Positions 15,280-59,088 of a DNA stretch of 64,000 bases are shown here, piece by piece. The stretch spans positions 2,728,001-2,792,000 of the forward strand of contig NC_043014.1 in the NCBI RefSeq assembly GCF_006345805.1. The letters are read 5' to 3'. Both the position numbers and the translations under genes were made by a program. This stretch comes from Octopus sinensis. Lineage: Eukaryota. Positions within the stretch are counted from its first letter, which is position 1, and every line of letters starts with the position of its first letter. The notes beneath the pieces were generated by a model that was not told where the DNA came from, did not search any database, and was given only the letters and a program-made list of their open reading frames with translations.

Positions 15280-15289
15280 ACCGGAAGTG
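15280..15289 (+). promoter_or_regulatory. ETS-family site ACCGGAAGTG, probable TATA-less promoter of DNAJC16
   Basis: Perfect ETS consensus about 200 bp upstream of the DNAJC16 ATG, at the edge of a locally CpG-containing segment. Confidence 0.55.
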
Positions 15290-15492
15290 ACCTGGTGAGA
15301 AGAACTGGTAACTAAGGGCAGATAACTGACTTTTACTTTGAATCGATTGTTGATATTTCCCCTCCTCCGCTGGAATTTAAATGTCATCAGCCACCTCGGG
15401 TACTTTGGACGGGGTATTCGCCAGTTTAACAGCTTCGAAACACAGAGGTACTGTACTATACGAGTATATTTTATAAGAAAAACTCAAACACG

Positions 15493-17766
15493 ATGAAGAA
15501 AATATTGGTTTCCCTCATGTTTTTACCGCTGATGATCGTAATTATTTCGAGTTTTGGTTCTGCTGATAATCCGTACGATGTGCTCGGAGTAAACAGACAC
15601 GCGAGCAACCAAGACATCAGGAAGGCTTATAAGTACCTGGTGAAGATGTGGCACCCTGACAAGAACAAAGATCCTGCTGCTGTGTTTAGATTTACCAAAA
15701 TCAACGAGGCGTACCAAACGTTAGGCCATCCGGAACGGCGGTCGATCTACGACCAACACGGTTACGTAGCATCTCATGACAATCACATACAAAGGAACTA
15801 CGCCAGGTATCAGAAACCGGGGCCACCTGGATCTCGGGTGTTCAATTTTGGAGCTGAATCGATTATCGATAAACACATGATAACCCACGAGTTCTATGAT
15901 GTCCGAATTCTTCCAGAAAGCTATCGAAGACCTTATTTTCTTTATGCATATGGTGACACTTGCCACATCTGTCGACATATCGAGCCTTTGATCGAAAAAT
16001 TTATCAAAGACCAAGAACAACTTGGAATTGGAGTAGGAACCATCCATGTGACATCGAACCGTGTGCTGGGCAGTAATTTGCGTATCCATGAAATTCCTCA
16101 GATCATGGCTATTGTCAATGGTCGGGTAACTTACTTTAAGGGCCACGTTACCAAACAAGCACTTCGCGACTTTGTTCGAAATCTGTTTGAACCTCCGAAA
16201 ACCTTGAAAACACTGAGCGATAATAACTTCAAAGATTTCCTGCTCGGGTGGTCTGATAACCGAATGAGAGCCTTATTTTTCGCCCCGAAAGAGAAACCGC
16301 CGTTGAGGTTCTTAATGTCGGCTTTCGCCCACCGTGAGAAAATCGCATCCGGTTATGTCAACACCCGAAGCTCTAATGTTTTAGGAATACTGGATCGTTT
16401 TAATGTAAACAAGGCTAAAGAAAGTCTTTTGATGGTTGGTGAAGACAGTAACACGAGTGTTGCAATTGTCACGATGAATACTTTGTCTTCGGACAGCATC
16501 AACGAAGTGATGGATGCTAACCAATACCTCACTTTACCTCGCCTCTCGTCGCAAATATTCTTTGATGAATTGTGTCCCATTGAGATCAGACCCAAACGTC
16601 GAAAACTGTGTGTGATTCTAGTCAGCAAGAAGACCGACGAACATAACAGGTACCGTTCACAGTTTCGAAACTACGTCGAGCGGGCTCCGACTTTCGAAAA
16701 CAAGGTGAAATTCATGTACCTCTACGAAGAAACACAGCGCCGTTTCGTCAGCGCCCTCATGGATGGGAACCAAACGCATTCAAACCCTTCGACACTGAAG
16801 CTGGCCATTCTGTGGCGCATGGACAAACACCACATGAACTATGAATGGGTGGAACCTGGATGGAGTGGTAACGACATCCATAACCAGATAACATGCCAGA
16901 ACCTTGAGAAACGTCTAGAAGAGTTGTTTGCCAGTTCTAATATTCTACACTACACTGCTACCTTGCCTGACTTCCACAATGAACACACGTTGAGTCTAAT
17001 GGTAAGAATCCTTCACAAGTTTTTCGACTGGTTTAATCGCCTGCTAAGCTATTTCAAACATTATGATTTCACGACATGGTTCAGCATTGTTATTGCTCTT
17101 CTCTCTGTCTTTTTTGTCGGATTGTTGATGCGTCGGATGCTTAACACGGAAATGGAAAAAGTGATGCAGCAACAGCCCAAAATAAGGCCTAGACCACTGT
17201 ACATCAAAAACAAGAGACTGGCTTTAAAAAGCCCCGACAACACTATGGTTCTTTATGAACTCTGTCCCGAGACCTACGACATGCTTGTCAAAGATACTGA
17301 TCCAGGTTTCACCATACTTGTACTTCTGGCAGATGATGACAAGGAAGATATATTGAATTCCTTCCGGAAGCTAATGAGAGAATATTCTCATTCCAACGTG
17401 CTGACTTTCTCTTATTTAGATCTCGACCAATATTTAGCATGGTACCGACACTTACTTGAAGAAAGCATTGACAACCGAGTTCAACTTTGTAACATTAACA
17501 TTCGCAACTGCATCGGCACGGTGTTGGCCATTAACGGTTACCGCCAGTACTATTACATCTACCATGCAAAGAGCACATCCAGAGGCTTACAACAGCTGCA
17601 TGGCACCGCCACAGAATCGGAAAGCGAGAAAGAACATAATGAATTAATTGTTAAACCACTTCTAGAAGGTGGACCTCTGCAAGGTTTGGATCGTTGGCTT
17701 TTGAAGTTATTTGATAGTAAACTACGCAAGATCCATGTCTCTTTTTGGCCTGACTTTGATTCATAA
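15493..17766 (+). CDS. DNAJC16: DnaJ homolog subfamily C member 16 (ERdj8-like), intronless, 757 aa
   Basis: Signal peptide, J domain with HPD (WHPDKN), thioredoxin-like domain with CxxC (CHIC-RHIEP), a TM segment near residues 530-550, and C-terminal GTVLAING similarity to DNAJC16. One open frame with no stops. Confidence 0.92.
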   Translation: MKKILVSLMFLPLMIVIISSFGSADNPYDVLGVNRHASNQDIRKAYKYLVKMWHPDKNKDPAAVFRFTKINEAYQTLGHPERRSIYDQHGYVASHDNHIQRNYARYQKPGPPGSRVFNFGAESIIDKHMITHEFYDVRILPESYRRPYFLYAYGDTCHICRHIEPLIEKFIKDQEQLGIGVGTIHVTSNRVLGSNLRIHEIPQIMAIVNGRVTYFKGHVTKQALRDFVRNLFEPPKTLKTLSDNNFKDFLLGWSDNRMRALFFAPKEKPPLRFLMSAFAHREKIASGYVNTRSSNVLGILDRFNVNKAKESLLMVGEDSNTSVAIVTMNTLSSDSINEVMDANQYLTLPRLSSQIFFDELCPIEIRPKRRKLCVILVSKKTDEHNRYRSQFRNYVERAPTFENKVKFMYLYEETQRRFVSALMDGNQTHSNPSTLKLAILWRMDKHHMNYEWVEPGWSGNDIHNQITCQNLEKRLEELFASSNILHYTATLPDFHNEHTLSLMVRILHKFFDWFNRLLSYFKHYDFTTWFSIVIALLSVFFVGLLMRRMLNTEMEKVMQQQPKIRPRPLYIKNKRLALKSPDNTMVLYELCPETYDMLVKDTDPGFTILVLLADDDKEDILNSFRKLMREYSHSNVLTFSYLDLDQYLAWYRHLLEESIDNRVQLCNINIRNCIGTVLAINGYRQYYYIYHAKSTSRGLQQLHGTATESESEKEHNELIVKPLLEGGPLQGLDRWLLKLFDSKLRKIHVSFWPDFDS

Positions 17767-18193
17767 TCCAACCATGAAAAAACATTTTCTTCCATAACTA
17801 GTCATAATCCATGCTTAACAAAGAAGAATCCTGTTCCTCTGATCCGAAGCTCCGAAACACGCATAAGTTGGATTGCCTTCTTGGATGTCAAAATTTTTAT
17901 CTCACAAAAGTATTCTCTTTAACTTGTATATTGTTGATAACCGAATCTCATTCACCTTTTATATGTGTGTGTGCATGTCTATATATGTATACATAATGTG
18001 AACAGTTGTATTTACAAATGGGGGTAGGTACTCAATACATGAAGGAGAGTATGTGTATTTTAACGGATGCTGGAATTTCTTAAATTGTAACTCTGAGTTT
18101 TAAGTTTCTGATTGTTCGAATGATTCAAAAACTCAACGTTACAAATCAAGGAGCTTCAGTTTCTAATAATATATACATGTGTGTATGTGTATG

Positions 18194-18272
<79 letters not shown>

Positions 18273-18855
18273 TAGACACACAAACATACATACATGCATA
18301 TATAATATATATATATGTGCATGCATACATACAATGATATATATATTATTATTAAGCAAGAATGTCGTTGACAGTAACTTCAAAGGTTCAACCAGCTAAG
18401 TCATTGTCGGATGATGGCTTAGCTGGCCGAAACATCGGAGTCACTATCAACAACATTCTTGCTTAAGAATGATAAATCTATTCTCTAAAAAAGTATAGAG
18501 TAACCCATCAGATTAATGTAAAATTGTTTTTATCATAACTGAACAAATATATAATATATAATATATATATATATATAATTAAAATAAGCAACAAGTATAT
18601 CTTAGGTAATTTGGTATGATCGTTTCATGCTACTTCATTTTATTAAACATTGTAAGTATTGAAGTTGGATGAAACGATCGTACCAAATTGCCTAAGATAT
18701 ACTTGTTGCTTATTTTGATTATAATCACTCCTTGGATTTATATGGATAATACCATACAAAATTCTGCTGCCTCTGACTTAAGTACCATATTCATTTGAAT
18801 CTAAATTTTGCTGAACTTACATAAATATATATATACACACATATATGTGTGTATT

Positions 18856-18910
<55 letters not shown>

Positions 18911-21425
18911 ATGTATGCACATACACACAGGCACACACATATCCATGTATATATATTTATATATATACATACATACATGCATACTCATGTATATGTGTGT
19001 CTATAAAAAATGTTGTTAATATTACCGTTTGTATTAATTAAGATGCTTGATTAGCAGACTCTGTAAAATTGTTCCAGAGTTAATTTGGGCCTTCGTCCTT
19101 CCAAGGGAGACAAATATTTTAGTTTCCCCTATCCTAACACAAAGATCCACTTCACAGCACTGTCCAGAAACATGTCTGGCCTCGTGCCGGTGTTAGAAGA
19201 CAGTGGACAACAGAATCACCTGCGGAGGAATGGACAGAGTACCTTACAGGATTCTGTTACACATCTCCTTACATGATCTGAGTTCATATCCTGCTGGGAT
19301 CGACTTCAATTTTCATTCTTCTTCTTCTTCCTCTTCTTCTTTGGATCTTATCTCGTCGTTTAAATACCACTCCTCAATTCTGTGGTCCTGCACCTGTCTA
19401 TCTTCTGACTTTACCTGTTGGTCTGTGACCATACTGGAGCACTGCTTTGGTAGGTTAGCCCAAACAAATCAATGCCAGTACTTTTTTTTTTAAAGCCTGA
19501 TTCTTATTCTGTTGGTCTCTTTTGCTGAGCCACCAAGTTACATGGACATAAACAAACCAACACCGATTATCAAGCATTGGTGGGTAACAAATGCAGACAG
19601 TCCTTACACTCATTTATATACATACTCAACAGGCTTCCACACAGTTTCCATCTACCAATTCATTTGCAAGGCAAGCTTCTCAACCACACCATCAAAGGTA
19701 TTAAGGTGAACTCACAGAATGAAAAGAAAATCAGAGAAAAAGCTTTATGAAATTTCTTCCAAACCTTTACATTCTGAGTTCAAATCTTGCCACGGTCAAC
19801 TTTACCTTTCATCCCTCCTGGCCCAGTGAAACAACATACCAGTCGAGTCTTGAGGTCGATGGCTTCGATTAACCCCATAACCACCACCCCCACCAAAATT
19901 GCTGGCCTTGTGCCTGAATCAGAAACCATTGTTATTGTGAAAGAACAGTGGGTTGGCAGAATTGGTAGATCATCAAGCAAAATTCCCTGTGGCATTTATT
20001 CCTGTTCTTTACATTCTGGGTTCAACTCCTGCCAAGGTCATCTTTCAGTTTTTATCCTTTCAGGGGTCAATAAAATTAAGTATCAGTCAAAGTTGCCGGG
20101 ATTGATGACATATAATCCCCAGCCCTCAGAATTGCTGGCTTTGTGCCTAAATTGGAAATGCTTCTTCTGCTTCTTCCATTGCATATAGTGAGGAACCAGC
20201 AGAATCATTAGGGCGTCAGTAAAAATGTCTGATGCCATTCCTTTCAGTTCTTCATGTTCTGAGATCAACTTTGCCTTTCATCCCTCCAAGATCGATAAAA
20301 TAAATTACCAGTCATGTGCTGGGGTCAGTGATATTGATTAACCTGTTCTCTTCCATGTAAGACTTAGAAAATATATTAAAAATATATTTTACACTGTGTA
20401 AACATTATTTGACCACCACCACCATTTAACATCTGCTTTTCATGCTGGCATGAGTTGGACAGTTTGACGGACTGGCAAGGCTGGATGGCTGTACCAGGCT
20501 CCAGTTGTCTGATTCAGTATTGTTTCTGTTACTGGAAGCTCTTCCTAATGTGAACCACTCTACAGAGTGCACTGGGCGCTTTTTATGTGATTCTGGCACA
20601 GGTGCCTTTCATGTGTGCCAGCATGGGTGCTTTTTACATGGTGCAAATAAAGGCCCTTTTATATGTGGCACCAGTATGGCTGATAAAGAATTCAATTTGC
20701 TGGACAGGGGGGACAAATATGTTTATTATATCAATTGCCAACAGTCAACAGTTTCACCCCGGGTGGGCTGAACATGACTCTGAAGGAGACTACATTGTTT
20801 GCAGCTTATATAAAGGGTTCTTGTCTGTCAACATGGTAAATTTTCCATCTGACTATTCTTATAAAATGCTCTCTCATCATCATCTAAAATCTGCTTTCCA
20901 TTCTGGCATAGGTCAGGAGATGGCAAATCAGAAGACTACGCCAACCCCTACTGTCTGTTGTCACATAGTTTCTATGGCTGGAGGCTCTTCTTAACACCAA
21001 CCACTTTACATAGTGTACAGGATGTTTTCTTTTGTTTTTTTTTTTACATAGCATGGAGTAACTATTATCTGTGGTATAAGCTTGTTTCTCATGGGATTGA
21101 ACCTAAAACAACATGGTTGGGAAATAAAATTTCTTAACCACACACCCATACCTAAGAGACATAATGACTAATCATCATCGTTTAATGTCTGCCTTCCATG
21201 CTGGATGGTTTGACCGGAACTGGCCAGGCAGGAGCCTGCACCAGACTTCTGTGTGTATTTTGGCAGGGGTCTTTACGGCTGGACACCCTTCCTAACACCA
21301 TCCACCCAGCAGAGTTTGTAGTAAAATTATATTTTACATAATGGAAGCATTGTCTGACATGGAACTTAATATGGGTTTATTAGAAGAGTGAGATGGGAAA
21401 TTTACCTTCAAGATATACCCCTTAA

Positions 21426-21803
21426 CCCTATAGCATTTGATCTGGCCATATCTGACCCAAATATGTTCTGACCAGTCAGATCTGGCACCTCACACCTCCC
21501 CTACAATGTCATTCTAAAAATATACAATCATCATCATTCAAATGTCTGTTTTCCATGCTGGCATGTCAGGCGCTGGATAGCCAAAGAACTGCACTTGGTT
21601 CCAGTTGTCTGTTTTGGCAATTTTTCTACAACTGGATACCCTTCCTGTTGCCAACCTCTTTACAGGGGGTACTGGGTGTCTTTTATGTGTCACCGGCATG
21701 TTATTGAAATCCTGAAAGTCTGAGATAATGCATGATTAATTCAAAACAATGTAAATGAATAAATAAGCTTTACATTTGACAAAGTGATCTGAAAGCTAAA
21801 GGA
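21426..21803. mobile_element. piggyBac-like MITE interrupted by a family C SINE fragment
   Basis: ttaa|ccctatagcatt...gctaaagga|ttaa. Internal similarity to 1927..2147. Confidence 0.7.
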
Positions 21804-22118
21804 TTAACGATGATTTTCTATCACAGTTTCTGCTTCTTTTAATTAGTTTTCAAAGATATCACCATCCCCACCTCCAATCCATACATATTCTTATGTCAAC
21901 TGCAAGCAAGTTTTTCTGGCCCGCAATCACAAATAGCCTAGCCTGGGTATAAAACTCTAAGTAGACTGTCAACTTTTGATATAATTAAACATGTCTGTCA
22001 ACTCTATCCAGCACATTGAGTTCTACTATTGATAACTTTTACACAATGTAAAATATATTTTGAATATATTTTACAACTCTTACACATCAACAGATATATA
22101 TGTGTACTCGTATGCATG

Positions 22119-22149
<31 letters not shown>

Positions 22150-22151
<2 letters not shown>

Positions 22152-22490
22152 GATGGCCGTCCACTTGTGACTGAGGAAGACCATTGCTGACCTTCAGGAA
22201 CATTGTCCACTCTAGGACTAACTTATATTTTGCATTTGCGGATCCGTTGGTGGCTAATGAGCCCTGCTCTTGACAAGCATACATGATTGTAAACATTGCA
22301 GACCAAGCTTTCCCCATTCACTACACCAACTGTGTGCTTTTGAGCAGCATGCTTCAATTCTCCATGCAGAAGATGTGCTCTCTCAAAGGAGTCGACCCCC
22401 TCCTTAACCTGCTTCCTCCATCTGTGGCGATGACAGGTATTGCTCCCCCAGTAGGTCTCCTGCATATCACAGGCATTTAATCAGCACATG
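22150..22490 (-). mobile_element. RTE-clade LINE 3' end (decayed)
   Basis: Minus strand WRKQVKEGVDSFE...LVCNVYNHVCLSRAGLISHQR matches the RTE ORF C-terminal C2H2-like motif. Confidence 0.7.
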
Positions 22491-23445
22491 ATTAATCATT
22501 AAATTGCAGCCTTGGTTTCTGCCGGGGTCTCTTTCCATTAAGAAGTTCCCCATATAACATGTTTAGGGATCCTGCTATCTTTTCAATAAGGGTATAATCG
22601 AACATGCTAAATTTGTTTGTTTCTACAAAATACACTTTGAAAATAGGGGTTGCAGCTTATACGCTAGCAAATAGGGTAGTTTTGAAAATAATAAAGAATT
22701 TAGTGAGATAAGTTTGCCATCATTTAAACTGGTGTTTAGAAAATGAGTTGACATGAAATTTTGGTTGAAGGTTTTTAGAACCCAGGGGAGGTCTCAGGTG
22801 TTGGAATCGAAGGACCTTCAGATGAAAAAAATAAGGAAGAGGCAGGTGTCTTATATTTATCATTGATTAATTAAAGAATGAAACACGTGGGAGAGGAAGG
22901 GGTACTTTACATGCGTTGAAGCATCTTCTAACTTAAGGACAAGAATATAGAGTTGGGTACTCTGTTTGTATTTTGGGGATCTTTTGGCTGATTCTGATGA
23001 TGAAAAATAAATAAAGAGGGAATGGTACCTTGCATGGGTTTTCAGAATCTTTTTGCACTTGGGTAACTGGGTAACTCAACTTTGGCGTTTAAAAACAATT
23101 TTAATAAAGAATTTTTTTTTTTCTGTTTTTAAAAATGTACCATCACCACCACTGTTCCAAAAATCCACTTCTGGTACTACAAAAGCATGCGTCTACCAGT
23201 CTGTTTGTCCTGATGTTACCTGTAATTATGAATTTTACCTGTGGGTTGTTTATAACTGGGTTATTGTTTTTTTTTTTTGAGGGGGGCAGGGTTTGTCTGG
23301 TGAAGACAAACAAAAACACTCATTCAAACAAATGTATTTATTTAAAGCTATGAAGTTTTTGTGCTGCTATTTAATTATATATATATATATTTTTTTTGTT
23401 TGTTTTTGATAAGTATGAACACATACATACTCATACACACACACA

Positions 23446-23752
23446 GTGGAGGCACATGGCCTAGTGGTTAGAGCAGTGGACTCGCAGTCAAGGGATCGCA
23501 GGTTCAAATCTCAGGCCGGGCGATGTGTGTGTTTATGAGCGAAAACACCTAAGCTCCACGCGGCTCCGACAGGAAGTAATGGCGAAACTTCTGCTGACTC
23601 TTTCGTCACAACTCTCTCTCACTCTTTCCTCCTGCATCTTGCAGCTTACCTGCGACGGACCGGTGTCCCGTCCAGGTGGGGAACCTATACGCCAAGAAAC
23701 CGGGAAACCGGACCTTATGAGCCAGGCATGGCTCAAGAAGGAACAAACATAC
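23446..23752 (+). mobile_element. tRNA-derived SINE family D (V/Meta-like central domain cctgcgacggaccggtgtcccgtccagg)
   Basis: A box tggcctagtgg, B box ggttcaaatc, (AAC) tail. Second copy at 43428..43703. Confidence 0.8.
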
Positions 23753-25585
23753 ACACACACACACACACTACATATATTTAAACTAGGAATTATTTTCCTG
23801 ATTTATAAAAATCATTTTAGTGGAACAAGCAGGAACACAAACACACATAATCTTTCTGTCTCATATTTATATATTTAATATATTTATGTAAATTATGGTA
23901 TTTTCTATTTATTTAAATTATGTATTTATTTAAAATATATTTTTATTTAAAATGTATTTAAATTATCTATTCATCTTAATTAAATATTCATTTAAATTAT
24001 TTATTTCAATTATATATTTATTCAAAATGTATTAAATTATATTTTTATTTTAAATATAATTCAAATGTATTTCAATCATGTGTTTAAAATGTATTTAACT
24101 AAATAATGTATTTATTTCAATTATATATTTATTTCAAATAAATTTATTTAAATTATATCTTTCAAAGCTGTGCCCCAGCATGGCACAGTCCAATGAATGA
24201 AGAAACTAAAAGATATAAGATTTATTTAAAATGTATTTATTTAAATTATATATTTATTTTGACATTTTCACAGAATTTTTTTTTTCTATTTTATGTCGTT
24301 TTGTGACAAAATGTACCAACATATACAAAACATTTAATCAAAGTGAGTTTTTTCACCAAAATTTTTGAAAAAGTTTTTTGGTGGAAGGATCAGAGGACAC
24401 ACAGACAGAAAAAATCTTTCTGACCATTTGGATCAAACCAAATTCTATTTCAGAGAGATTTCCGTTTCAATATTCTCAATGTCACTTTTTTTTTTTCCTT
24501 CTGTTGTTTTGGCCATGCATAAGTCTACAGATTACTGTTGCTCCAGCATGAGCTTAGCCTTGATGAATAAAACAAACAGAAAAGACACACACACACACAC
24601 ACACATTTATTTATTTATTCATCTATTTGACTGTCAAATTTTTTTTGGTAATTTACCAAAATATTTCAATTTTTACCAAAAATTTCCATTTTACTCACCC
24701 GCACACCCCCTTGCCACCCCCACCCCCATCATGATCACCACTACTCGTGTGGGTGGAGGGGTGGGTGTTTTTTTATTGAACTGATTGATCTGATATTGTT
24801 CTATGGTTATACTATCTAATTAATTCAAATCGGTTAAAATTTAATTAACCAAATACTTTGAATTTGTTTGGATTTTTTTTCTAAAAAACAAAAATAAGCT
24901 GTTTTCCACTCTCACCCTACCCCCATCCCTGATCCACCCCTGCACCCTGTTCCATGTTTCTGTTGTTGTTATTATTATTATTATATTATTATTATTATTA
25001 TTAAGGTGGTGAGCTGGCAGAAATGTTAGCATGGTGGGCGAAATGCTTAGCGGCATTTCCTCTGCCTTCACGTTCTGAGTTCAAATTCCACTGAGGTCAA
25101 CTTTGCCTTTCATCCTTTCGGGGTCGATAAATTAAGTACCAGTGAAACTCTGGGGTTGGTGTAATCAGCTAGACCCCTCCCCCAAAATTTCAGGCCTTGT
25201 GCCTATCGTAGAAAGAATTGTTGTTGATGTTTTGTTATTGTTATTATCTCTTGTCTTTCAAAATGAATTGACTCCACACACAAGTGACAAGCATGGACTT
25301 CAGCACCAAACACATATGTAAATGCATGTATGTGTGTGTATATATATATATGTATATATATATATATGTATATATATATATGTATATATATATGTATATC
25401 ATCATCATCATCGTTTAACGTCCGTTCTCCATGCTAGCATGGGTTGGACGGTTCGACCGGGGATCTGGGAAGCCAGAAGGCTGCACCAGGCTCCAGTCTG
25501 ATCTGGCAATGTTTCTACAGCTGGATGCCCTTCCTAACGCCAACCACTCCGTGAGTGTAGTGGGTGCTTTTTACGTGCCACCCGC

Positions 25586-25925
25586 ACATATATGTATATA
25601 TATATACATATATGTATGTATATACATATATGTATGTATATACATATATGTATGTATATACATATATGTATGTATATACATATATGTATGTATATACATA
25701 TATGTATGTATATACATATATGTATGTATATACATATATGTATGTATATATATATATATATGTATATATGTATATATATATATGTATATATGTATATATA
25801 TATATGTATATGTATATATATGTATATGTATATATATGTATATGTATATATATGTATATATATATGTATATATATGTATATATATGTATATATATATATG
25901 TGTATGTATATATATATATATATAT
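25586..25925. repeat. Compound (TA)n microsatellite with an 18-bp periodic unit tatatgtatgtatataca
   Basis: Directly visible. It produces the spurious YIYV ORFs. Confidence 0.95.
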
Positions 25926-26288
25926 ACGCGCGTGTATGTAGTTGCACATTCGTGTGTTTCCTTGCTAAAACCAGTATTTTGTGGAACAGGGTCAACGTTA
26001 ACTGTGAAACCTCAATTACCCCACCCCCTTGCTCCCTCACCCCTCACCCAATCACTTGATCTAATGGCGTGAAAGAAAATAAAAAATAAAATGATAAAAA
26101 AAAAACACTAGAAGCTTGTGTTTTGTTCGGAATGAATCTGGTGCAAATATTTCAATATTTGAATTTATAATTTATATTTTACATTTGTTAAAGAATAAAA
26201 AAAAAAAACATACTAAATCACTGTTGTTTTTATTCTTCTTTTTTTTTGCAAACAAAATCTTTCCTTTGTTTTAAATTCTGTCATCGTC

Positions 26289-26750
26289 GCCAGACGCCGG
26301 AGCTTCAGTGAATCCATGCCCAGGGAAACAAGGCGCTCAGAGTCAGACACCTACCATACTCTGAGCGCCTTGTTTCCCTGGGCATGGATTCACTGAAGCT
26401 CCGGCGTCTGGCAACGGACTTGGTAAACACCCACAAAGTTATCAACCACCTCACCAACAACACTGAACACCTTTTTGATCTCCATGTGTCTAACACACGT
26501 GGACATGCCTACAAAGTCAGAACACAACACAGCTCCCATGACTTTCGGAAACATTTCTTCACGCTCAGAGTTGCTGAAGCATAGAATAAACTGCCTGCGT
26601 CAGTTGTTGACTGCCATGACACTGCATCCTTTAAGGCCCTCATGCTTTCCGAAATCCGCCGAAACTACACCTGATTATATATACACTTTAGATGAGTTGT
26701 AGTGCACCTGAGCACTGTACACAATGTTTTTTATTATTTTATTATTATTA
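26289..26750 (+). mobile_element. 5'-truncated CR1-type LINE 3' end with fold-back 5' inversion
   Basis: LPYSERLVSLGMDSLKLRRL...TRGHAYKV...RKHFFTLRVAEA*NKLP is the CR1 ORF2 C-terminus. 3' stem-loop agtgc-acctga-gcact and (ATT)n tail. Confidence 0.85.
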
Positions 26751-27199
26751 TCATCATCATCATCATCACCATTTGATGTCCACTTGTCCACGTTGTTCCT
26801 GTCTCCAACCTTCACTTGTTTCTGAGTAAGGAAATAGCCGCCCCACAAGGCCAGACATGTTTTCACGGAAGACTGCAAACAAGAGGACACCTCTTGCACG
26901 ACAGGGATGCTCGTTTACAATCGTCACCAGATATCAAGGTAAGGTAACAGTAACACACAAACACGCACACACACACACATGTACAAAGAACTTCTCAGCT
27001 TCTGTCTACCGAATCCACTCGTCCAAGGCACTTTGCCCAAAGTACTAAGCAGCAGGGATCAACCCAGAGCCATATTTTTTTACTCGTCTCAGTTATTACA
27101 CGACGGCCATTCTGGGGTGCAAGGCCTTGAATTGACCCCAGTAATCTGTTTTTTTATTTATTTTAAAGCCTGGCACCTTACTCTATTGGTTTATTTTGC

Positions 27200-27632
27200 T
27201 TCCCTGGGCATGGATACATTGAAACTCCGACGTCTGGCAGCTGACTTGGCAGACACCCATAAAATTATCAACCATCTTACAAACAATAACTCTGAGCACC
27301 TTTTCAAACTCCACCCGTCTAACACCCGTGGACATATTTACAAAGTCAGAAAACAGCACAGCTCCCATGACTTCAGGAAACATTTTTTCACGCTGAGAGT
27401 TGCTGAAGCATGGAACAAACTGCCGGCATCAGTTGTTAGTCGTTGGAGCACTGCATCCTTGCCAACACTACACCTGATCTTCTCCCCTCCATACACACAC
27501 AGGCATGTATCTGACTCATACACTGTTCGCTTTCCAGACATTTGTACATTACTGCATATGCTTTATATGCACTTTTCACAAGTTGTGGTGCACCTGAGCA
27601 CTGTATACAATAATTTCATTATTATTATTATT
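27200..27632 (+). mobile_element. Second 5'-truncated copy of the same CR1 family
   Basis: SLGMDTLKLRRL...RKHFFTLRVAEAWNKLP, same 3' stem-loop and (ATT)n tail, longer 3' UTR than the first copy. Confidence 0.85.
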
Positions 27633-28419
27633 TTGCTAAACTGTTAAATTATGGGGACATAAACACACCAACACCAATTGTCAAGCAGCATGGGGAGGAG
27701 GGACAAACAAACACACGCACACACACATATATATATTCTTTTACTTGTTTCAGTCATTTGACTGGCCATGCTGGAGCAGTGCCTTCAGTTGAAGGCATGA
27801 ACCCCAGGACTTATTCTTTATAAGCCTAGCACTTATCCTATAGGTGTCTTTTGCCGAACCACTTAGTTATGGGAACGTAAACACACCAACATCAGTTGTC
27901 AAGCATATACATACATACATACATATATATATATGATGGGCTTCTTTCAGTTTCCATCTACCAAATCAACTCACAAAGCTTTGAACAGCCTGAAGCTATA
28001 GTAGAAGACACTTGCCCAAGGTGTCACACAGTGGGACTGAACCTAGAACCATGTGGTTGGGAAGCAAGCTTCTTACCACACAGATATGCCTATGCCTATA
28101 TATATGATGGGCTTCTTTCAGTTTCTGTCTACCAAATCTACTGACAAGGCTTTGGTTGGCCCCAGGCTATAGTAGAAGACACTTGTCCAAGGTGCCATGC
28201 AGTTGGGAAATAAACCTCTCACCCCACAGCCACCCCTGCACCAATGCTCTAATCTATATTTCATTGTTTATTTTATTTCCCCTTACTTCTGGTCTTGGAG
28301 AAGGGGTCAGTCAGATATACAAACCTCACCAGTACAAATTCAATTCAATAAAGTTCAAGGATTTGCATCTTAGTTTACGCTGCCAAAGTTTGGCGCTTGC
28401 CTAAGATCTATTCCTGGAC

Positions 28420-29017
28420 CGACGGTCATTCAGAATGCTCACAGCAGCCATATTCCTACCGCTCTATGTCACACTGGTAAGACCCATATTGGAGTACGGG
28501 ATTCAAGCCTCTTCTCCTTATCTCCTCAAAGACATACAGCATCTCGAAAGAGTCCAGAAGCTGGCTACCCGCATGGTTCTTGGTCTCAAGCATTTGTCTT
28601 ATGAAGAAAGGCTGAGGATGCTCGACCTTTATTCTCTAGAAAAACGACAACGCCGTGGAGATCTCATTCTTGCTCACAACATCATAAGCGGAAAGTGTAA
28701 CCTCTCGAAAGAGCTGTTCTTCACTCCTGCTCCAGAGTGTTGGCTGCGGGGTCAGTCCGAAAAGCTCTATCTGCGACGATTTCATCTCAATCGAAGGAGA
28801 GGGGCTTTCTCCGTCCAGGTTGCGGATCCGTGGAATAAGCTGCCGGACAAGATAGTGAAGATGCCGACGACCGCTCGGTTTAAAGTCTCCCTTAACCACA
28901 AGTGGCCTGAACTCTTTACATGAACACCACCCTGTACATAACTCCATGTCCCCCTACATGGCCTTGCTTTTTTGCTTTTTGAGCCAAAAATTAACTAACT
29001 AACTAACTAACTAACTA
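28420..29017 (+). mobile_element. 5'-truncated CR1 LINE of a different family
   Basis: LYVTLVRPILEYG...LERVQKLATRM...YEERL...LEKRQRRGDLI...WNKLP, 3' hairpin ccatgt-cccct-acatgg, (AACT)n tail. Confidence 0.88.
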
Positions 29018-29384
29018 AAATCTCTCAGATACAATAGCCACTAATTTTTCTCCCTTTCATTCCAGAGAGTAAGAAATTTTAAAGTGCTCGACCTCTCCCT
29101 GTGGTTTAGCTGCTGCAAGGAACCTATCTCCAAGGTCTTCAGTGGGCCCCACACTATGACGGGTCCAGATTAAGAACTAAAGTCTTCTATGAGGCAAACT
29201 TTGGTTTCCTGTTCCATGTCAGTTGTCTTCTTGCAGTCCCAGGATCACAAAAGCATTGGGAGTGGATTTGGTGGACAGAAACTGAAAGAGGGCTATTGTG
29301 TGTGTGCTTGTGCTTTTCTTGACATCACATGACATTTTGCAAAAAGCCTGGCACCAATGGAATAGCAACAGCAAAAGCAAAATT

Positions 29385-30115
29385 AGACTAGCAACAACAT
29401 GAGATAGCAATGGCAAACTGCAGTGATAACATCAAGGATAGCAACAACATTGGCTAAACTAGATTAGCAACAACATCTGAGATAGCAATGGCAAGCTGCA
29501 GTAATAACATCAGGGATAGCAACAACATTGGCTAAACTAAATTAGCAACAACATCTGAGGTAGCAATGGCAAACTGCAGTGATAACATCAGGGATAGCAA
29601 CAACATTGGCTAAACTAGATTAGCAACAACATCTGAGATAGCAATGGCAAGCTGCAGTAATAACATCAGGGATAGCAACAACATTGGCTAAACTAAATTA
29701 GCAACAACATCTGAGATAGCAATGGCAAACTGCAGTGATAACATCAGGGATAGCAACAACATTGGCTAAACTAGATTAGCAACAACATCTGAGATAGCAA
29801 TGGCAAGCTGCAGTAATAACATCAGGGATAGCAACAAGATTGGCTAAACTAAATTAGCAACAACATCTGAGATAGCAATGGCAAACTGCAGTAATAACAT
29901 CAGGGATAGCAACAACATTGGCTAAGCTAGATTAGCAACAACATCTGAGATAGCAATGGCAAGCTGCAGTAATAACATCAGGGATAGCAACAACATTGGC
30001 TAAGCTAGATTAGCAACAACATATGAGATAGCAATGGCAAGCTGCAGTAATAACATCAGGGATAGCAACAACATTGGCTAAACTAAATTAGCAACAACAT
30101 CTGAGATAGCAATGA
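29385..30115. repeat. 78-bp minisatellite, about 9.5 copies, with degenerate tagcaacaac-rich extension to about 30440
   Basis: gctaa unit starts at 29453, 29531, 29609, 29687, 29765, 29843, 29921, 29999 and 30077 (exact 78-bp period). Confidence 0.95.
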
Positions 30116-31179
30116 CATAAATTGTGAAGGGAACACATCTGGGATAGCAACAACGCAACTGAGTTGGCAACAATATCTGATGAGAAAGCAACAAGTATCT
30201 GCAATAGCAACAACATATCCTGAATTTTGGATAATAACACAGTGGAGATAGTAACAGCAATGGACTGATATATCAACAACAGGAGTGGATTAGCAACAAC
30301 AATGACAAAAGTGGGTTAGCAACATCTGTGAAAGCACTGATACAAACTGGGAGAATTGCAACACATCTGGGTTAGCAACAACACAACCAAGAAAGCAACA
30401 AACATCTAAGATAGCAACAGCACATCTGAGCAATAGCAACAAAACCACAGTGAATTAAGTTGAAAATTATCAAAATAGTAGGTGTAGGAGTGGCTGTGTG
30501 GTAAGTAGCTTGCTTACGAACCACATGGTTCCAGATTCAGTCCCACTGCGTGGCACCTTGGGCAAGTGTCTTCTACTATAGCCTCAGGCCGACCAAAGCC
30601 TTGTGAGTGGATTTGGTAGACAGAAACTGAAAGAAGCCCGTCGTATATATGTATGTGTGTGTGTGTTTGTGTTTGTCCCCCCAACATCGCTTGACAATCG
30701 ATGGTGGTGTGTTTACATCCCTGTAACTTAGCAGTTCGGCAAAAGAGACAGATAGAACAAGTACTAGGCTTACAAAGAATAAGTCCTGGGGTCGATTTGC
30801 TCGACTAAAAGCGGTGCTCCAGCATGGCCACAGTCAAATGACTGAAACAATTAAGAGAGTAAAAGAGAATTAAATACACTGATTTCAAGACCCACCTATT
30901 TGTGGGAAGGCCACGGTCAAGTAAACCAACCATTACGTTTTGACGACCCCAGGAGATTAAAAAGGAAGAGTTATTCCTGGGGTATTTGAACTCAGAAACG
31001 TCACACAACATAATGATATTAAAATAATTTATTGACAAAAGAATGATATGTGCATGTACATACATAATTGTGTATGTTTGTATATATGTATTGAGTGTGT
31101 ATCTTTATATGCATGTGTGCGTGAATGTGTGTATAAACATTTTAGTGTGCATGTCTAAGCTGATATAAATACATGTGTG

Positions 31180-31211
<32 letters not shown>

Positions 31212-31224
<13 letters not shown>

Positions 31225-31415
31225 TTAGAGACAAAACCACTATTTTGCAAATCAAACAAAGAAAGACTTAATCCAATACATAAAAAAATTTTAATATAAA
31301 TTAAATAAAATTATAATTTTATTTAATTTATATTAAAATTTTTTTATGTATTGGATTAAGTCTTTCTTTGTTTGATTTGCAAAATAGTGGTTTTGTCTCT
31401 AATTAATATTATATA
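31212..31415. repeat. Perfect 204-bp spacerless palindrome
   Basis: 31212..31313 is the exact reverse complement of 31314..31415, centred on aaaattataatttt. Confidence 0.9.
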
Positions 31416-31729
31416 ATATTTTACTATAAAATTGGATTCAATCCTAAATCTGATTTTCCCTGTAAATTTGGATTTATTCCCTAATATTTATTATTATATA
31501 TATATATATATATATACAAATGTAAATCTATGTGTGTCTCTAGTCAAATGTATTTACAAAGAGTTAAGAGAACAGATGAATGGACAAGAGGAGACAACTC
31601 TGTCAATTGGTAACTAGTTAGAAACGGTAACATGACAGTTGAAAATTATTACTGTAATGGTCACCCAGAGCAGTAAAGAACAGAAAGGCACTTGACATCT
31701 TCCAAGGTAATGTAGCATCATTTTATATA

Positions 31730-33043
31730 TTAAACACCTGCATATTCAGTTTCCTGGTTTAGCTTCTTGAATTCCACAACTCGCAGGAAGATATATTCCA
31801 GTATATGTTTGGCATCTTTCGATTCTGAAGAGAGTTTAGTGGTCACCCCTAAAATATCTCCACACTCTCGTATGTAATACTCAAGGTCAGAGTCTGTGCA
31901 CTTATTTGTGAGTTGGGCCAGACGAGCCTTCTCCGACGAGAATTGCTCGTCGAGGTCAAACAGATCCAAACTGGGGGCAGGCAGTTCCCGAAGAGCCAAC
32001 GGGAAAACAGCCGGCTGGAGTGGACTGAGAGGGGTTTCAAACTGTGGGGTGATCAGTGCAAGGGTGTCATGCTTCACATGCAGTTCGTTGTAGGCCCGAA
32101 TCGCTGTGGGGATGAGGGACGTGTCCAGTTTGTACAGAGAGTTGTCAAACAGGGAGGCAATGTCGCGAGGAATGTCGTCCGTTTCCTGCAAACAAGTCTT
32201 CAGTTCTTCAGACAAGGTGGACATTTGTGGCAGCATGTTGTAGTCAGATATGTCTGGGTCATCGGCATCGATCTGGTTCAGTTTGATGTTGTTTGTGGTG
32301 AGAAATTTCAGCAGAACTTCCAGGATCTTCAGATTCTCTTCTTTCTCTAAGTAAGTATCGTTAAACATATGTACAGAACCGAGAACGGCGAGTTTGCCTT
32401 TGCTTTGCTGGCTGGAATACAGGGCACACACTGGACGGTTGAGTGGGAACGACACAGTGCCTGACGACAAGATGGACACAGCTGGAGCAATGACATTCAG
32501 GGTCGCACCAAAAGGATACAGAAACGAGAGTGCTTGTGCATTGTTCCCACCATCAGAATCACTGATCAGTCCTGAGTTCAGCTTCCCTGCTGCTTGGCTG
32601 ATGGCTCTGTTCAGGACCCCATTCTGTACCAACACTTCTTTAGGGTGGAAATACTTGTGATAAGATGTCCTCACAACAGAGTCGCTGTTTATCATAATAC
32701 CATATTCTTCAAGCAGGAAGTTGATGTTGTTTTCGTATCGGTCTTCTCCGCCTTCACCCAGCATCACAAATATATTGCCGCCCTTGGCAACGTAGTGTTT
32801 CATGACATTGAACTCATCCTGAGTGAATTTCTCGCGGGGAGCCGCCAGGACAAACACACGGGCACTGGCGAGCTTCTCCTCGGTAATCGAGTCCTTGTTG
32901 TTTTGGAATCTCCAGTCAGACCGAAGTTTACGACTGAAGGTTTTGAAACCTCGACCCAGGGAGAACAACTCGTTTTTGCAAGTATTAAAAAGTATCAAGT
33001 TACCAGGATTCCCACCTTCAACGCCTTCTGTGACAGGTGCCAT
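31730..33043 (-). CDS. IFT52: Intraflagellar transport protein 52, intronless CDS, 437 aa
   Basis: GIFT-domain motifs (PREKFT.DEF, VMLGEGGE, INFLLEEYGI, YHKYFHPKE, YPFGATL, FPLNRP) and C-terminal LPQ/ITPQFETPL...LFDLDEQFSSEK. Full length with no stops. Confidence 0.96.
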   Translation of the reverse strand: MAPVTEGVEGGNPGNLILFNTCKNELFSLGRGFKTFSRKLRSDWRFQNNKDSITEEKLASARVFVLAAPREKFTQDEFNVMKHYVAKGGNIFVMLGEGGEDRYENNINFLLEEYGIMINSDSVVRTSYHKYFHPKEVLVQNGVLNRAISQAAGKLNSGLISDSDGGNNAQALSFLYPFGATLNVIAPAVSILSSGTVSFPLNRPVCALYSSQQSKGKLAVLGSVHMFNDTYLEKEENLKILEVLLKFLTTNNIKLNQIDADDPDISDYNMLPQMSTLSEELKTCLQETDDIPRDIASLFDNSLYKLDTSLIPTAIRAYNELHVKHDTLALITPQFETPLSPLQPAVFPLALRELPAPSLDLFDLDEQFSSEKARLAQLTNKCTDSDLEYYIRECGDILGVTTKLSSESKDAKHILEYIFLRVVEFKKLNQETEYAGV

Positions 33044-33075
33044 GTTTCTGGAATGTTTTAGATATCAACCCACTT

Positions 33076-33100
33076 CTGAAAGAAAAAAAACAGAGAAATA
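33076..33100 (-). promoter_or_regulatory. 3' splice acceptor of a putative 5'-UTR intron of IFT52
   Basis: Minus strand tttctctgttttttttctttcag|aagtgg, a strong polypyrimidine tract plus CAG, about 32 nt before the ATG. Confidence 0.6.
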
Positions 33101-35243: not shown

Positions 35244-36079
35244 ATTTAACCAAACCATCCAACCCATGCCAGCATGGATAATGGATGTTAAATGATGATG
35301 ACATATATAAATACATACACATATTTATATATAAATACATAACGGAGTAAACACATAAATGTGAAACAAGGTGGAAAAAGAGTACTCAAATACCAGTGGT
35401 AGAGTAATATGCTTTAGTTAAAAGCAGCAGAAAATTTTGCTAGAATTCTAGCAAAAACTGTCCAACGAACGGGAACGTGAAACTCAGAGTAACAGGTTTT
35501 GTTGAATTTTCTGCTGCTTTTAAATAAAGTATATAAATACATAGAAATACACACATATATATACTAATGTGAAAAGAATTCGTAAATATAATTAAAAAAT
35601 TAAATTCCTGTAGAATAAAAAAAAAGAGGGGGGGGTTGTATGTTGATATTTGCTGTGGGAATTGGTTCGCAAATGAAAATGCCAGAATTCTGGTTTAAGC
35701 TCCCCAAAACGTTTATATTTTTTGTTATTTTCAGAAAATTTTTGCGGGAATTCATACGATTATGGAAAAAGTTTTTCATTTTTTTAAACCCCACTATAAA
35801 CACTATAAACCCTAAATGGTCCACACTTTTTCGATTTTTTTCTTCTTTGAAACCAGAGTTTAAAATACGGACGGTCCGACCTCTTTGCTTAAATACCCCA
35901 CAGTGGACCACCCCTGGGTGCATCCTCATTCCATTAAACGTTTTTATGGAGTGGAAAATTTTGAAAAACGTGGAATTTTCAGAAAAATTTGGCGAATTTG
36001 TGTTCTGCTAGTCTTATAGTCTTTTATTTGTTGCAGTCGTTTGGCTACAGCCATGCTGTAACGTTCACAAGTTATACCA

Positions 36080-36200
36080 TTCCTGTATCCTTTTGCTGCG
36101 ACATTGAATGTCATTGCTCCAGCTGTATCTATCTGGGACAGTTTCGTTCCCACTCAACCGTCCCGTACGTACCCTGTATTATTCCAGCCAGCAAAACAAA
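36080..36200 (+). pseudogene. IFT52: Decayed IFT52 fragment, inverted relative to the intact gene
   Basis: Aligns to IFT52 32524..32399 (FLYPFGATLNVIAPAVSI...GTVSFPLNRPV..LYSSQQ.K) with 15 substitutions, an 8-nt frameshifting deletion and a 3-nt insertion. Confidence 0.9.
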
Positions 36201-36973
36201 AGTTTAAAGTTTTCGAAATTTTTTTTAAATCACAGTCCAAATTCTTTTCTTTTTCTTTTTTCTTTTACTTGTTTCAGTCATTTGACTGCGGCCATGCTGG
36301 AGCACCGCCTTTTAGTCGAGTAAATCAACCCGGGACTTATTCTTTGTAAGCCCAGTACTTATTCTATCGGTCTCTTTTGCCGAACCGCTAAGTTACGGGG
36401 ACGTAAACACACCAGCATCGGTTGTCAAGCGATGCTGGGGGACAAACACAGACACACAAACACACACATATACATATATACGACAGGCTTCTTTCAGTTT
36501 CCATCTACCAAATCCACTCACAAGGCATTGGTCGGCCCGGGGCTATAGCAGAAGACACTTGCCCAAGATTCCACGCAGTGGGACTGAACCCAGAACCATG
36601 TGGTTGGTTAGCAAGCTACTTACCACACAGCCACTCCTGCGCCTATTCTTGGCTTAAATCCCAAAACAGACGATTAAATGTGTTTATGGGAAGAAAGATA
36701 TTGAAAGACATCAATATATCAGAGAGATAAACAAACGAAGTCGGTATGAGGTGGTCGTGAGATGTGCTAAAAATAACGGCTAAATACTGCTTAAATCACA
36801 TTTTTTTTTGCATAGGCGTAGGAGTAGCTGTGTGGTAAGTAGCTTGCTTACCAACCATATGGTTCCGGGTTCAGTCCCACTATGTGGCACCTTGGGCAAG
36901 TGTCTTCTACTATAGCCTCGGGCTGACCAAAGCCTTGTAGACGGAAACTGAAAGAAGCATGTCGTATATATGC

Positions 36974-58140: not shown

Positions 58141-59055
58141 TTTGCTTCTTCATTGGATTATTCGATGTGAATTTCGTTAGGTTAAATTCACTTTTACTTT
58201 AAAGTATCTGCGAACAGATACGTATTTATTTTTATATTTTCTCTCTTTTTCAACTCTCCAAGTCAATAATTAATGTATCTATATATTTATTTACCTAATT
58301 ATTCAAGCGTGAAGAAAGAAAAAGAGAAAAAAAAAACGGAGTCTCAGGGTAAGTGCGAGAGAGAAAGAGAGAGAGATGGATGAAGTTTGAGAAGTTCAAA
58401 ACTTAGTTCCTGTTGATTTCGAAGACTTTGTGTGTTTATAGTCCCACGTATTCCTCATTTAAAAAAAAGACAGACCAAACCTTATATTTTTTTAATTCAC
58501 AGATGAGAGCCCCACAACCTCGACATACCCCAAACTTGTTGCATTCATAAGCAAAGATGTTTCTTTTTAAATATATTTTTCTTTTTACCTTCCAGTATTT
58601 ATTGTAATCAAGAATCTAAATCGAACCTTATTAAAAGAAAAGAAAGAAAAAAGCAAAAAAGAAAAGGAAAAGAATCTTGTGTGTCTTTCCCCTCTCTTCG
58701 ACAAATTCTTCATTTATATTTCTAAACCAAGTCGGTCGGTCGACTTGGTATTCTTTCTGTCTGTGAAAGAAATAAAAATGGGATGGAGAGCCTCCTTGCC
58801 TGCTTTTTTGGCTTGTGTTTGTCTGCCCGCTTCCTTATTTTGCATCGCTTAACTAACTTTTGGATGCAAAAACTCCAAGATACTTTTGTTGAAGTCGGAA
58901 TTCTTCAACATTTCGCCATTCTTGGGACTGGCTTCACCTACAATCAATTTCATTTTCTAAGAACACCCGTTATATTATATGGCGGTGCCGTAGTCGAACA
59001 TTGAGATCAGTAAAATAGTTATATATATATATACATACATACATACATCATATAT

Positions 59056-59088
<33 letters not shown>

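What the first reader, a model, noticed from the sequence alone, without database searches (positions are those of the whole stretch)
15493..33043. Two normally intron-rich housekeeping genes (DNAJC16, IFT52) both intronless and intact within 14 kb
Seen: both CDSs are full length, single-frame and stop-free (2274 and 1314 nt), and the neighbouring ZNF ORF also appears single-exon. Established: vertebrate DNAJC16 and IFT52 are each spread over many exons. No poly(A) remnant or TSD is visible next to either ORF, so these are either old retrogenes or cases of in-place cDNA-mediated intron loss. A local cluster points to a retroposition or intron-purging hotspot, or to a lineage-wide replacement of parental genes, in a genome full of LINE reverse transcriptases.
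Basis: partly seen in the sequence, partly recalled or inferred. Interest (0 to 1): 0.7.

Follow-up and report, generated by a model that had tools for sequence, protein, structure and literature searches.

The report
Ancient neighbouring retrogenes in octopus: IFT52, DNAJC16
In octopuses, argonauts and cuttlefish the cilium gene IFT52 and a DNAJC16 chaperone gene each have an unbroken coding sequence and sit tail to tail, most likely because spliced-mRNA copies replaced the original many-exon genes before these groups split; it is a new example of a known process.

Summary
Window 15493-17766 (+) encodes a complete 757-aa DNAJC16-type protein, and 31730-33043 (-) a complete 437-aa IFT52. The window is Octopus sinensis chromosome CM016876.1.

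- **Conservation:** the same convergent pair, with unbroken coding sequences, occurs in O. vulgaris, O. bimaculoides, Argonauta hians and on one 65.6-kb cuttlefish-like contig. It therefore predates the octopod/decapod split.
- **Outgroups:** Patella IFT52 has at least 13 coding exons and Pinctada DNAJC16 has 13. In eight other molluscs and a nemertean the two genes lie on different chromosomes.
- **Function:** both are under strong purifying selection (dN/dS 0.03-0.09), and IFT52 is transcribed in Sepia.
- **Parents:** no second IFT52 appears in annotated octopod proteomes, which fits retrogene replacement. DNAJC16 forms a cephalopod-only family of three clades. Clades A and B are both intronless; the structure of clade C is unknown.
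- **Correction:** only the coding sequence lacks introns. IFT52 has a 5'UTR intron.

Best reading: ancient retroposition with loss of the parents. A "hotspot" is not shown, since about a quarter of squid gene models are single-exon. This is a new member of a known kind, of moderate interest.

The parts
15493..17766 (+). Complete single-exon CDS of DNAJC16 paralogue 'A' (757 aa). It has a signal peptide, a J domain with HPD, a thioredoxin-like domain with CHIC, and a C-terminal transmembrane segment.
   Evidence: ORF. Pfam DnaJ and Thioredoxin. DNAJC16-specific Pfam domains precomputed for this gene. Collinear with no gaps in Argonauta and O. bimaculoides. dN/dS 0.09 against Argonauta.
15280..15326 (+). 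Upstream block about 170-210 nt before the ATG. It holds an ETS-like CCGGAAGTG (15281-15289) and a 17-nt motif AACTAAGGGCAGATAAC (15310-15326) that is also present upstream of the Argonauta orthologue. Putative core promoter or 5'UTR (inferred).
   Evidence: Direct reading. No expression data for Octopus.
17767..18560 (+). 3' flank of DNAJC16-A, probably the 3'UTR. It belongs to a 93%-identical block shared with O. bimaculoides.
   Evidence: blastn of window 16017-18560 against L001.
17767..31729 (.). 14-kb intergenic spacer between the two convergent genes. It holds microsatellites, a 78-bp x 9.7 tandem repeat (29362-30114), SINE copies and three related LINE-tail-like ORF fragments (26336-28923). 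No other Pfam-recognisable ORF was found.
   Evidence: The spacer is 8.3 kb in O. bimaculoides, 6.6 kb in Argonauta and 35 kb in the sepiid contig.
30868..31729 (-). IFT52 3'UTR region. AATAAA lies at 31028-31033. A lineage-specific perfect 204-nt palindrome lies at 31212-31415.
   Evidence: Sequence. 94% blocks shared with O. bimaculoides on either side of the palindrome. Palindrome, also present in O. vulgaris.
31730..33043 (-). Complete single-exon CDS of IFT52 (437 aa).
   Evidence: ORF. Three IFT52 Pfam domains. 97% aa identity to O. bimaculoides, 90% to Argonauta, 79% to Sepia. dN/dS 0.03-0.05.
33044..33096 (-). Short 5'UTR part of the coding exon (33044-75), preceded by a candidate 3' splice site (AG at 33076-77, polypyrimidine tract 33078-96). 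Predicted end of a 5'UTR intron.
   Evidence: Sequence. Equivalent acceptor 35 nt upstream of the ATG in the Argonauta gene model. Acceptor 13 nt upstream shown in Sepia by spliced RNA contigs against genomic sequence.
36064..36211 (+). 143-nt inverted partial copy of the IFT52 CDS (nt 503-645), frameshifted here.
   Evidence: tblastn, HMM, blastn and alignment. Present in O. bimaculoides and O. vulgaris, not found in Argonauta.
2619..3599 (-). 326-aa C2H2 zinc-finger ORF, the 'neighbouring ZNF'.
   Evidence: Pfam zf-H2C2_2 6.9e-36 and zf-C2H2 6.7e-28.

Best explanation
Both genes descend from reverse-transcribed, fully spliced mRNAs that were inserted into the genome of a cephalopod ancestor before octopods and decapods split. 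The copies became the working genes.

- **IFT52:** the copy picked up an upstream non-coding exon and promoter, which explains the 5'UTR intron. It took over the function, and the 13-14-exon parent was lost. This is retrogene replacement, also called an 'orphan retrogene'.
- **DNAJC16:** an intronless copy, or several copies, gave rise to a cephalopod-only family. Clades A and B occur in octopods and decapods; clade C was found only in decapods. The window holds clade A. No intron-bearing DNAJC16 was found in octopods.
- **Adjacency:** the tail-to-tail arrangement has been kept since that ancestor. It most likely reflects two independent insertions, or a later rearrangement, into a region that permits transcription, rather than one event.

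Shown: the structures, the conservation, the selection, the multi-exon outgroups, and the lack of linkage in outgroups. Inferred: retroposition as the mechanism, loss of the parents, and recruitment of the promoter.
For: 1. The coding sequences are unbroken in O. sinensis, O. vulgaris, O. bimaculoides and Argonauta and on sepiid contig ctg95807l.
2. The outgroups are multi-exon: Pinctada DNAJC16 has 13 coding exons over 33 kb, and Patella IFT52 has at least 13 over 20 kb.
3. Every coding intron is missing at once, including the one after codon 6 that Patella has.
4. IFT52 and DNAJC16 lie on contigs of different length, hence different chromosomes, in Pinctada, Gigantopelta, Babylonia, Dreissena, Biomphalaria, Mactra, Sinanodonta and Lineus. 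At least one gene must have moved to create the coleoid pair.
5. DNAJC16 clades A, B and C group together with 100% NJ bootstrap, apart from all other molluscs. A has 100% support and B 89%, and each holds both octopods and decapods.
6. Clade B is also intronless, on another chromosome, in O. bimaculoides and the sepiid. This is the expected outcome of RNA-based duplication.
7. Only one IFT52 from each octopod appears among the best 120 hits, which reach down to 60% identity.
8. dN/dS is 0.03-0.05 for IFT52 and 0.09 for DNAJC16-A. Spliced Sepia RNA contigs show that IFT52 is expressed and has a new 5' non-coding exon.
9. Patella shows no acceptor upstream of its ATG, so the coleoid 5'UTR intron looks derived.
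10. A later 143-nt IFT52 CDS fragment, with a SINE-like head and an A-rich end, may also derive from IFT52 mRNA within Octopus; this is suggestive only.
Against: - No poly(A) tail or target-site duplication was seen. This is expected at this age, but it means the mechanism is inferred and not seen directly.
- I could not search whole genomes for an intron-bearing parent or its relics. Absence rests on annotated proteomes and a word-indexed search.
- The structure of decapod clade C is unknown, because only RNA-like contigs were available. It could be a surviving parent.
- Nautilus was not available, so the event could be older than coleoids.
- Coleoid genomes are heavily rearranged, so lack of linkage in the outgroups does not strictly exclude in-place intron loss followed by translocation.
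- The 10-kb flanks of the Patella and Pinctada genes were too short for a real synteny test.
Confidence: 0.7

Rival explanations
1. In-place intron loss. Each gene stayed at its ancestral locus and lost all coding introns by recombination with its own full-length cDNA (the Fink-type model). The two loci were later brought together by the large-scale rearrangements of coleoid genomes.
For: - There are no retroposition hallmarks such as poly(A) or target-site duplications.
- IFT52 keeps one 5'-most intron, and cDNA-mediated loss typically spares 5' introns.
- Coleoid genomes are known to be strongly rearranged (my own knowledge).
Against: - All 12-13 coding introns are gone in both genes, including the ancestral first intron after codon 6.
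- The retained intron is in the 5'UTR, at a place where Patella shows no acceptor.
- DNAJC16 exists as at least two intronless copies on different chromosomes, which in-place loss does not explain.
- No exon of a Patella or Pinctada neighbour was found near the cephalopod genes (a weak test).
Confidence: 0.15
2. A retroposition hotspot or a single co-insertion. The two cDNAs entered the same locus because it is a preferred landing or survival site, or in one event. The block is kept together by shared regulation.
For: - Two unrelated converted housekeeping genes lie 6.6-35 kb apart and have stayed convergent since before the octopod/decapod split.
- All three recognisable genes in the window have a single coding exon.
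Against: - Template-switch chimeras would put both genes on the same strand, and twin priming would give a divergent pair, not a convergent one (established mechanism, my own knowledge).
- Single-exon models make up 24% of Euprymna gene models, so adjacency alone is weak evidence.
- No further converted genes were seen in 64 kb.
- C2H2 ZNF genes with a single finger-array exon are common in octopus (my own knowledge).
Confidence: 0.1
3. Artefact: cDNA contamination or a mis-assembly placed processed sequences in the assembly.
For: None beyond the absence of introns.
Against: The same arrangement, embedded in lineage-specific repeats, occurs in five independent assemblies: O. sinensis, O. vulgaris, O. 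bimaculoides, A. hians and an ENA long-read contig.
Confidence: 0.01

Closest known systems
Retrogene replacement, as in amphioxus SYCP1 (Garstang & Ferrier 2018, PMC5803294)
   Same: - A single coding exon where other animals have many exons.
- No parental copy found.
- Conserved across the clade.
- A non-coding 5' exon or promoter recruited at the new site.
- The gene remains functional.
   Different: - Here two unrelated genes of this kind lie side by side.
- One of them (DNAJC16) has further intronless paralogues.
- Loss of the parent is inferred from proteomes, not from a genome-wide search.
'Orphan' retrogenes of the human genome (Ciomborowska et al. 2013, PMC3548309)
   Same: Ancient intronless genes whose intron-bearing parent has disappeared, recognised by comparison with multi-exon orthologues in outgroups. 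The hallmarks have eroded.
   Different: A different lineage (coleoid cephalopods) and different genes. IFT52 and DNAJC16 are multi-exon in vertebrates.
Reverse-transcriptase-mediated in-place intron loss (Fink model; intron-poor yeasts)
   Same: Precise removal of introns through a cDNA intermediate, with possible survival of a 5' intron.
   Different: That model keeps the gene at its locus and usually removes 3' introns piecemeal. Here every coding intron is gone, at least one gene has changed chromosomal neighbourhood, and DNAJC16 has dispersed intronless paralogues.
Canonical IFT52 (IFT-B core subunit) and DNAJC16/ERdj8 genes of other animals
   Same: Full domain sets and strong purifying selection, so presumably the same cellular roles (cilium assembly; ER J-domain co-chaperone).
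   Different: - The gene structure differs: 1 coding exon against about 13-14.
- Cephalopods have 2-3 DNAJC16 paralogues. Only one DNAJC16 per other mollusc appeared in the hit lists.

Membership tests
Retrogene replacement / orphan retrogene | Single coding exon where orthologues in outgroups are multi-exonic | tested here: met
   Unbroken CDS in five cephalopod assemblies. Patella IFT52 has at least 13 coding exons and Pinctada DNAJC16 has 13.
Retrogene replacement / orphan retrogene | Located at a locus unrelated to the ancestral one | tested here: inconclusive
   The two genes are on different chromosomes in eight other molluscs and a nemertean but adjacent in coleoids, so at least one moved. 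No Patella or Pinctada neighbour exons were found near the cephalopod genes, but only 10-kb flanks were available.
Retrogene replacement / orphan retrogene | No intron-bearing parental copy left in the genome | tested here: inconclusive
   IFT52: one protein per octopod among the best 120 hits, which reach down to 60% identity. DNAJC16: octopods have only the intronless clades A and B. A whole-genome tBLASTn was not possible. The structure of decapod clade C is unknown.
Retrogene replacement / orphan retrogene | Retroposition hallmarks (poly(A) tract, target-site duplications) | tested here: not met
   None seen in the IFT52 3' flank or 5' flank, or in the DNAJC16 5' flank; the DNAJC16 3' flank was not read. 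Their absence is expected for an insertion older than the octopod/decapod split, where synonymous sites are saturated.
Retrogene replacement / orphan retrogene | The copy is functional (constrained and expressed) | tested here: met
   dN/dS 0.03-0.09. Spliced RNA contigs of Sepia IFT52 from several runs. Octopus expression was not examined.
IFT52 (IFT-B core) | GIFT, central and C-terminal IFT52 domains at full length | tested here: met
   PF23355 2.8e-117, PF23352 2.1e-35, PF21178 1.6e-29. 65-70% identity to other lophotrochozoan IFT52 proteins.
DNAJC16 / ERdj8 | J domain plus thioredoxin-like domains plus DJC16 C-terminal domain | tested here: met
   DnaJ 1.6e-23 and Thioredoxin 3.4e-08. PF26973, PF26968 and PF26976 precomputed for this gene. 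The HPD motif can be read directly in the translation.
In-place cDNA-mediated intron loss | The gene remains at its ancestral locus with its ancestral neighbours | tested here: inconclusive
   The outgroup genes are unlinked, which argues against it for at least one gene. A proper synteny comparison was not possible.

The most novel reading that the evidence does not exclude
The pair is a visible trace of a wider wave of retrogene replacement on the coleoid stem. Many conserved multi-exon genes would have been swapped for processed copies at new sites. This would contribute to the well-known scrambling of ancestral gene order in coleoid genomes, and some landing regions, such as this one, would act as long-lived 'nurseries' kept together by shared regulation.
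Probability: 0.12. Interest if true: 0.7.

Novelty: new member of a known kind. Interest (0 to 1): 0.42.

Why it matters
IFT52 is a core, normally single-copy cilium-assembly gene. If every coleoid runs on a processed copy of it, that is a clean, datable case of an essential gene being replaced by its own retrocopy.

DNAJC16 shows the same process producing a small, lineage-specific family of ER co-chaperones.

Together they give two ready-made markers for two questions:
- How much did RNA-mediated gene movement contribute to the loss of ancestral synteny in cephalopods?
- When did it happen relative to Nautilus?

On its own, the case is an ordinary instance of a known mechanism. It is not evidence of a hotspot.

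Tried and rejected
1. **Relic exon of the parental IFT52.** The IFT52-like piece at 36064-36211 covers nearly the same residues (168-215) as one Patella exon (about 170-212). I rejected this reading for four reasons. The piece is 81-88% identical in DNA to the intronless gene, closer than the Octopus and Argonauta CDSs are to each other (79%). It extends past the exon ends. It is absent from Argonauta. No other relic exon was found by a profile search of the six-frame translations.

2. **One chimeric insertion by template switching or twin priming.** Rejected because the genes are convergent.

3. **cDNA contamination or mis-assembly.** Rejected by five independent assemblies.

4. **P0126 as a pseudogene.** It seemed to have five in-frame stops. 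In fact the ENA gene caller read TGA as Trp. The true ORF is 775 aa and intact.

5. **Search for shared neighbour exons** between the Patella or Pinctada flanks and the cephalopod loci. It found nothing, and the flanks are too short for the result to be informative.

6. **Six-frame Pfam scan by DNA reference.** 20 further window ORFs (110-372 aa) and one O. bimaculoides ORF were scanned instead: only the ZNF matched in the window, and the O. bimaculoides ORF matched IFT52_GIFT.

7. **Literature searches** for retrogenes, intron loss or single-exon genes in cephalopods, and for IFT52 or DNAJC16 retrogenes. None reported this case.

8. **Clade C transcripts (L014, L015).** They could not show gene structure, because they look like RNA assemblies.


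Full report
**1. What is there**

The window has only two long ORFs. One is 15493-17766 (+), 757 aa. The other is 31730-33043 (-), 437 aa. The next longest ORF is 372 aa.

Pfam calls the first a DnaJ plus thioredoxin protein, and the second IFT52 with all three of its domains. The precomputed annotation of the first gene adds the three DNAJC16-specific domains.

Exact-protein look-ups place the window on Octopus sinensis chromosome CM016876.1 (GCA_006345805.1), at about 2.73-2.79 Mb. The identical IFT52 protein is also encoded in O. vulgaris.

The two genes are convergent, with 14 kb of repeats between their stop codons. The spacer holds microsatellites, a 78-bp tandem array, SINEs and LINE-tail-like ORF fragments.

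**2. How widely the structure is shared**

| Assembly | Structure | Spacer |
|---|---|---|
| O. sinensis (window) | both CDSs unbroken, convergent | 14 kb |
| O. bimaculoides (L001) | IFT52 unbroken; DNAJC16 model single-exon (its 5' end lies beyond L001), convergent | 8.3 kb |
| Argonauta hians (L002) | both CDSs unbroken, convergent | 6.6 kb |
| Sepiid-like contig ctg95807l, 65.6 kb | both CDSs without introns, convergent | 35 kb |

- On the sepiid-like contig (ENA sample ERZ21867824), DNAJC16-A lies at 20767-23077 (+) and IFT52 at 58195-59508 (-). This IFT52 is 94-95% identical to that of Sepia pharaonis.
- DNAJC16-A on that contig has no intron but has one frameshift near residue 265.
- The pair therefore existed before octopods and decapods diverged.
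- Synonymous sites between Octopus and the sepiid are saturated.

**3. The ancestral state**

- Pinctada DNAJC16 has 13 coding exons over 33 kb.
- Patella IFT52 has at least 13 coding exons over 20 kb. Its first intron comes after codon 6.
- From the contig lengths in the hit tables, the two genes lie on different chromosomes in Pinctada, Gigantopelta, Babylonia, Dreissena, Biomphalaria, Mactra, Sinanodonta and Lineus. Only in Owenia do the contig lengths coincide.
- So the coleoid adjacency is derived, and at least one of the two genes has moved.

**4. Parents and paralogues**

*IFT52.* The best 120 database hits reach down to 60% identity. They contain one protein each from O. bimaculoides and Argonauta, and one cluster each for two decapod lineages. 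No second, intron-type IFT52 is visible.

*DNAJC16.* Cephalopods have three clades, and the three together have 100% NJ bootstrap support against all other molluscs.

| Clade | Members | Support |
|---|---|---|
| A | window, O. bimaculoides, O. vulgaris, Argonauta, two decapods | 100% |
| B | O. bimaculoides P0129, Argonauta P0166, Sepia and others | 89% |
| C | two decapods only | 100% |

- Clade B is also intronless. It lies on another chromosome in O. bimaculoides (L003) and on a 110-kb sepiid contig (L004).
- The apparent 848-aa length of the sepiid clade B protein is a gene-caller artefact, because TGA was read as Trp. The real ORF is 775 aa.
- The structure of clade C could not be determined.

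**5. Function**

- dN/dS is 0.03-0.05 for IFT52 and 0.09 for DNAJC16-A.
- Sepia RNA contigs from several sequencing runs carry the full IFT52 CDS. One of them still has an Illumina adapter at its end, which marks it as read-derived.
- When compared with genomic sequence, those RNA contigs are spliced once, in the 5'UTR. The intron is about 820 nt, and its acceptor lies 13 nt before the ATG.
- The Argonauta gene model has a 5' exon 3.4 kb upstream, with an acceptor at -35.
- O. sinensis has ttttttttctttcag at -32.
- Patella has no acceptor upstream of its ATG.
- So 'intronless' applies to the CDS only. The 5' intron looks like a later acquisition, as is usual when a retrocopy recruits a promoter.
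- DNAJC16-A has a block about 170-210 nt upstream, containing CCGGAAGTG and a 17-nt motif shared with Argonauta. It may be a promoter (inferred).

**6. Mechanism**

Four observations point the same way:
- every coding intron was lost at once in both genes;
- at least one gene changed location;
- DNAJC16 has dispersed intronless paralogues;
- IFT52 has a derived 5' non-coding exon.

The best explanation is ancient retroposition followed by loss of the parental genes. This is retrogene replacement (concept and examples in PMC5803294 and PMC3548309).

No poly(A) tract or target-site duplication was seen in the IFT52 3' flank. That is expected at this age, but it leaves the mechanism inferred.

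In-place intron loss followed by rearrangement remains possible, at about 15%.

The 'hotspot' reading is not supported by the data in hand, for three reasons:
- the convergent orientation does not fit a single chimeric insertion;
- 24% of Euprymna gene models are single-exon (PMC10771462);
- nothing else in the 64 kb is a converted housekeeping gene, the third gene being an ordinary C2H2 ZNF.

**7. Side observation followed up**

A 143-nt inverted copy of IFT52 CDS nt 503-645 lies 3 kb upstream of the gene, at 36064-36211.
- It is shared with O. bimaculoides and O. vulgaris and was not found in Argonauta.
- In O. bimaculoides it sits inside a 227-aa ORF.
- It nearly coincides with one ancestral exon. 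However, it is too similar to the intronless gene (81-88% in DNA), and it overruns the exon ends.
- I therefore read it as a later partial copy of the processed gene, not as a relic of the parent.

**8. Verdict**

No paper in the library describes this case. It is a new member of a known kind, of moderate interest. Its main value is as a dated marker pair for asking how much RNA-mediated gene movement shaped coleoid genomes.

Noticed in passing
window 36064-36211 (+); L001 7644-7790 (-): A 143-nt inverted partial copy of the IFT52 coding sequence (nt 503-645) lies 3 kb upstream of the gene. It is preceded by SINE-head-like sequence and ends at an A-rich stretch. It is frameshifted in O. sinensis. 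In O. bimaculoides it is embedded in a 227-aa ORF that still scores as IFT52_GIFT (6e-12). It was not found in Argonauta.
   Followed up: partly
window 31212-31415: A perfect 204-nt palindrome (two 102-nt arms, no spacer) lies inside the IFT52 3'UTR, flanked by (TA)n runs. It is present in the independent O. vulgaris assembly and absent at the aligned place in O. bimaculoides. It may be a foldback element or an inverted duplication, and could affect the mRNA.
   Followed up: partly
window 29362-30114: A 78-bp unit is repeated 9.7 times at 94% match between the two genes. The array is also present at the syntenic place in O. bimaculoides.
   Followed up: no
window 26336-28923: Three mutually related ORF fragments (29-59% aa identity) look by eye like the C-terminal tail of LINE ORF2. 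None has a Pfam match. They are conserved in O. vulgaris.
   Followed up: partly
L004 10001-12547 (ENA ERZ21867824 ctg112063l): The public gene call on this cephalopod contig read TGA as Trp, which inflates the DNAJC16-B protein from 775 to 848 aa. Other proteins from this sample may be over-extended in the same way.
   Followed up: yes
L013 9019-11329 (ENA ERZ21867824 ctg95807l): The sepiid DNAJC16-A orthologue is split into two ORFs by a single frameshift near residue 265. It is either an assembly indel or a real inactivation in that species. A related decapod protein (P0123) is intact.
   Followed up: no
L016 2145-4750: LINE ORFs (endonuclease plus reverse transcriptase) lie upstream of the sepiid IFT52, ending about 0.4 kb before its 5' non-coding exon (5144-5295) and 1.4 kb before its coding exon.
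   Followed up: no
window 2619-3599 (-): A 326-aa C2H2 zinc-finger ORF, typical of the expanded octopus ZNF family. Its conservation was not examined.
   Followed up: no
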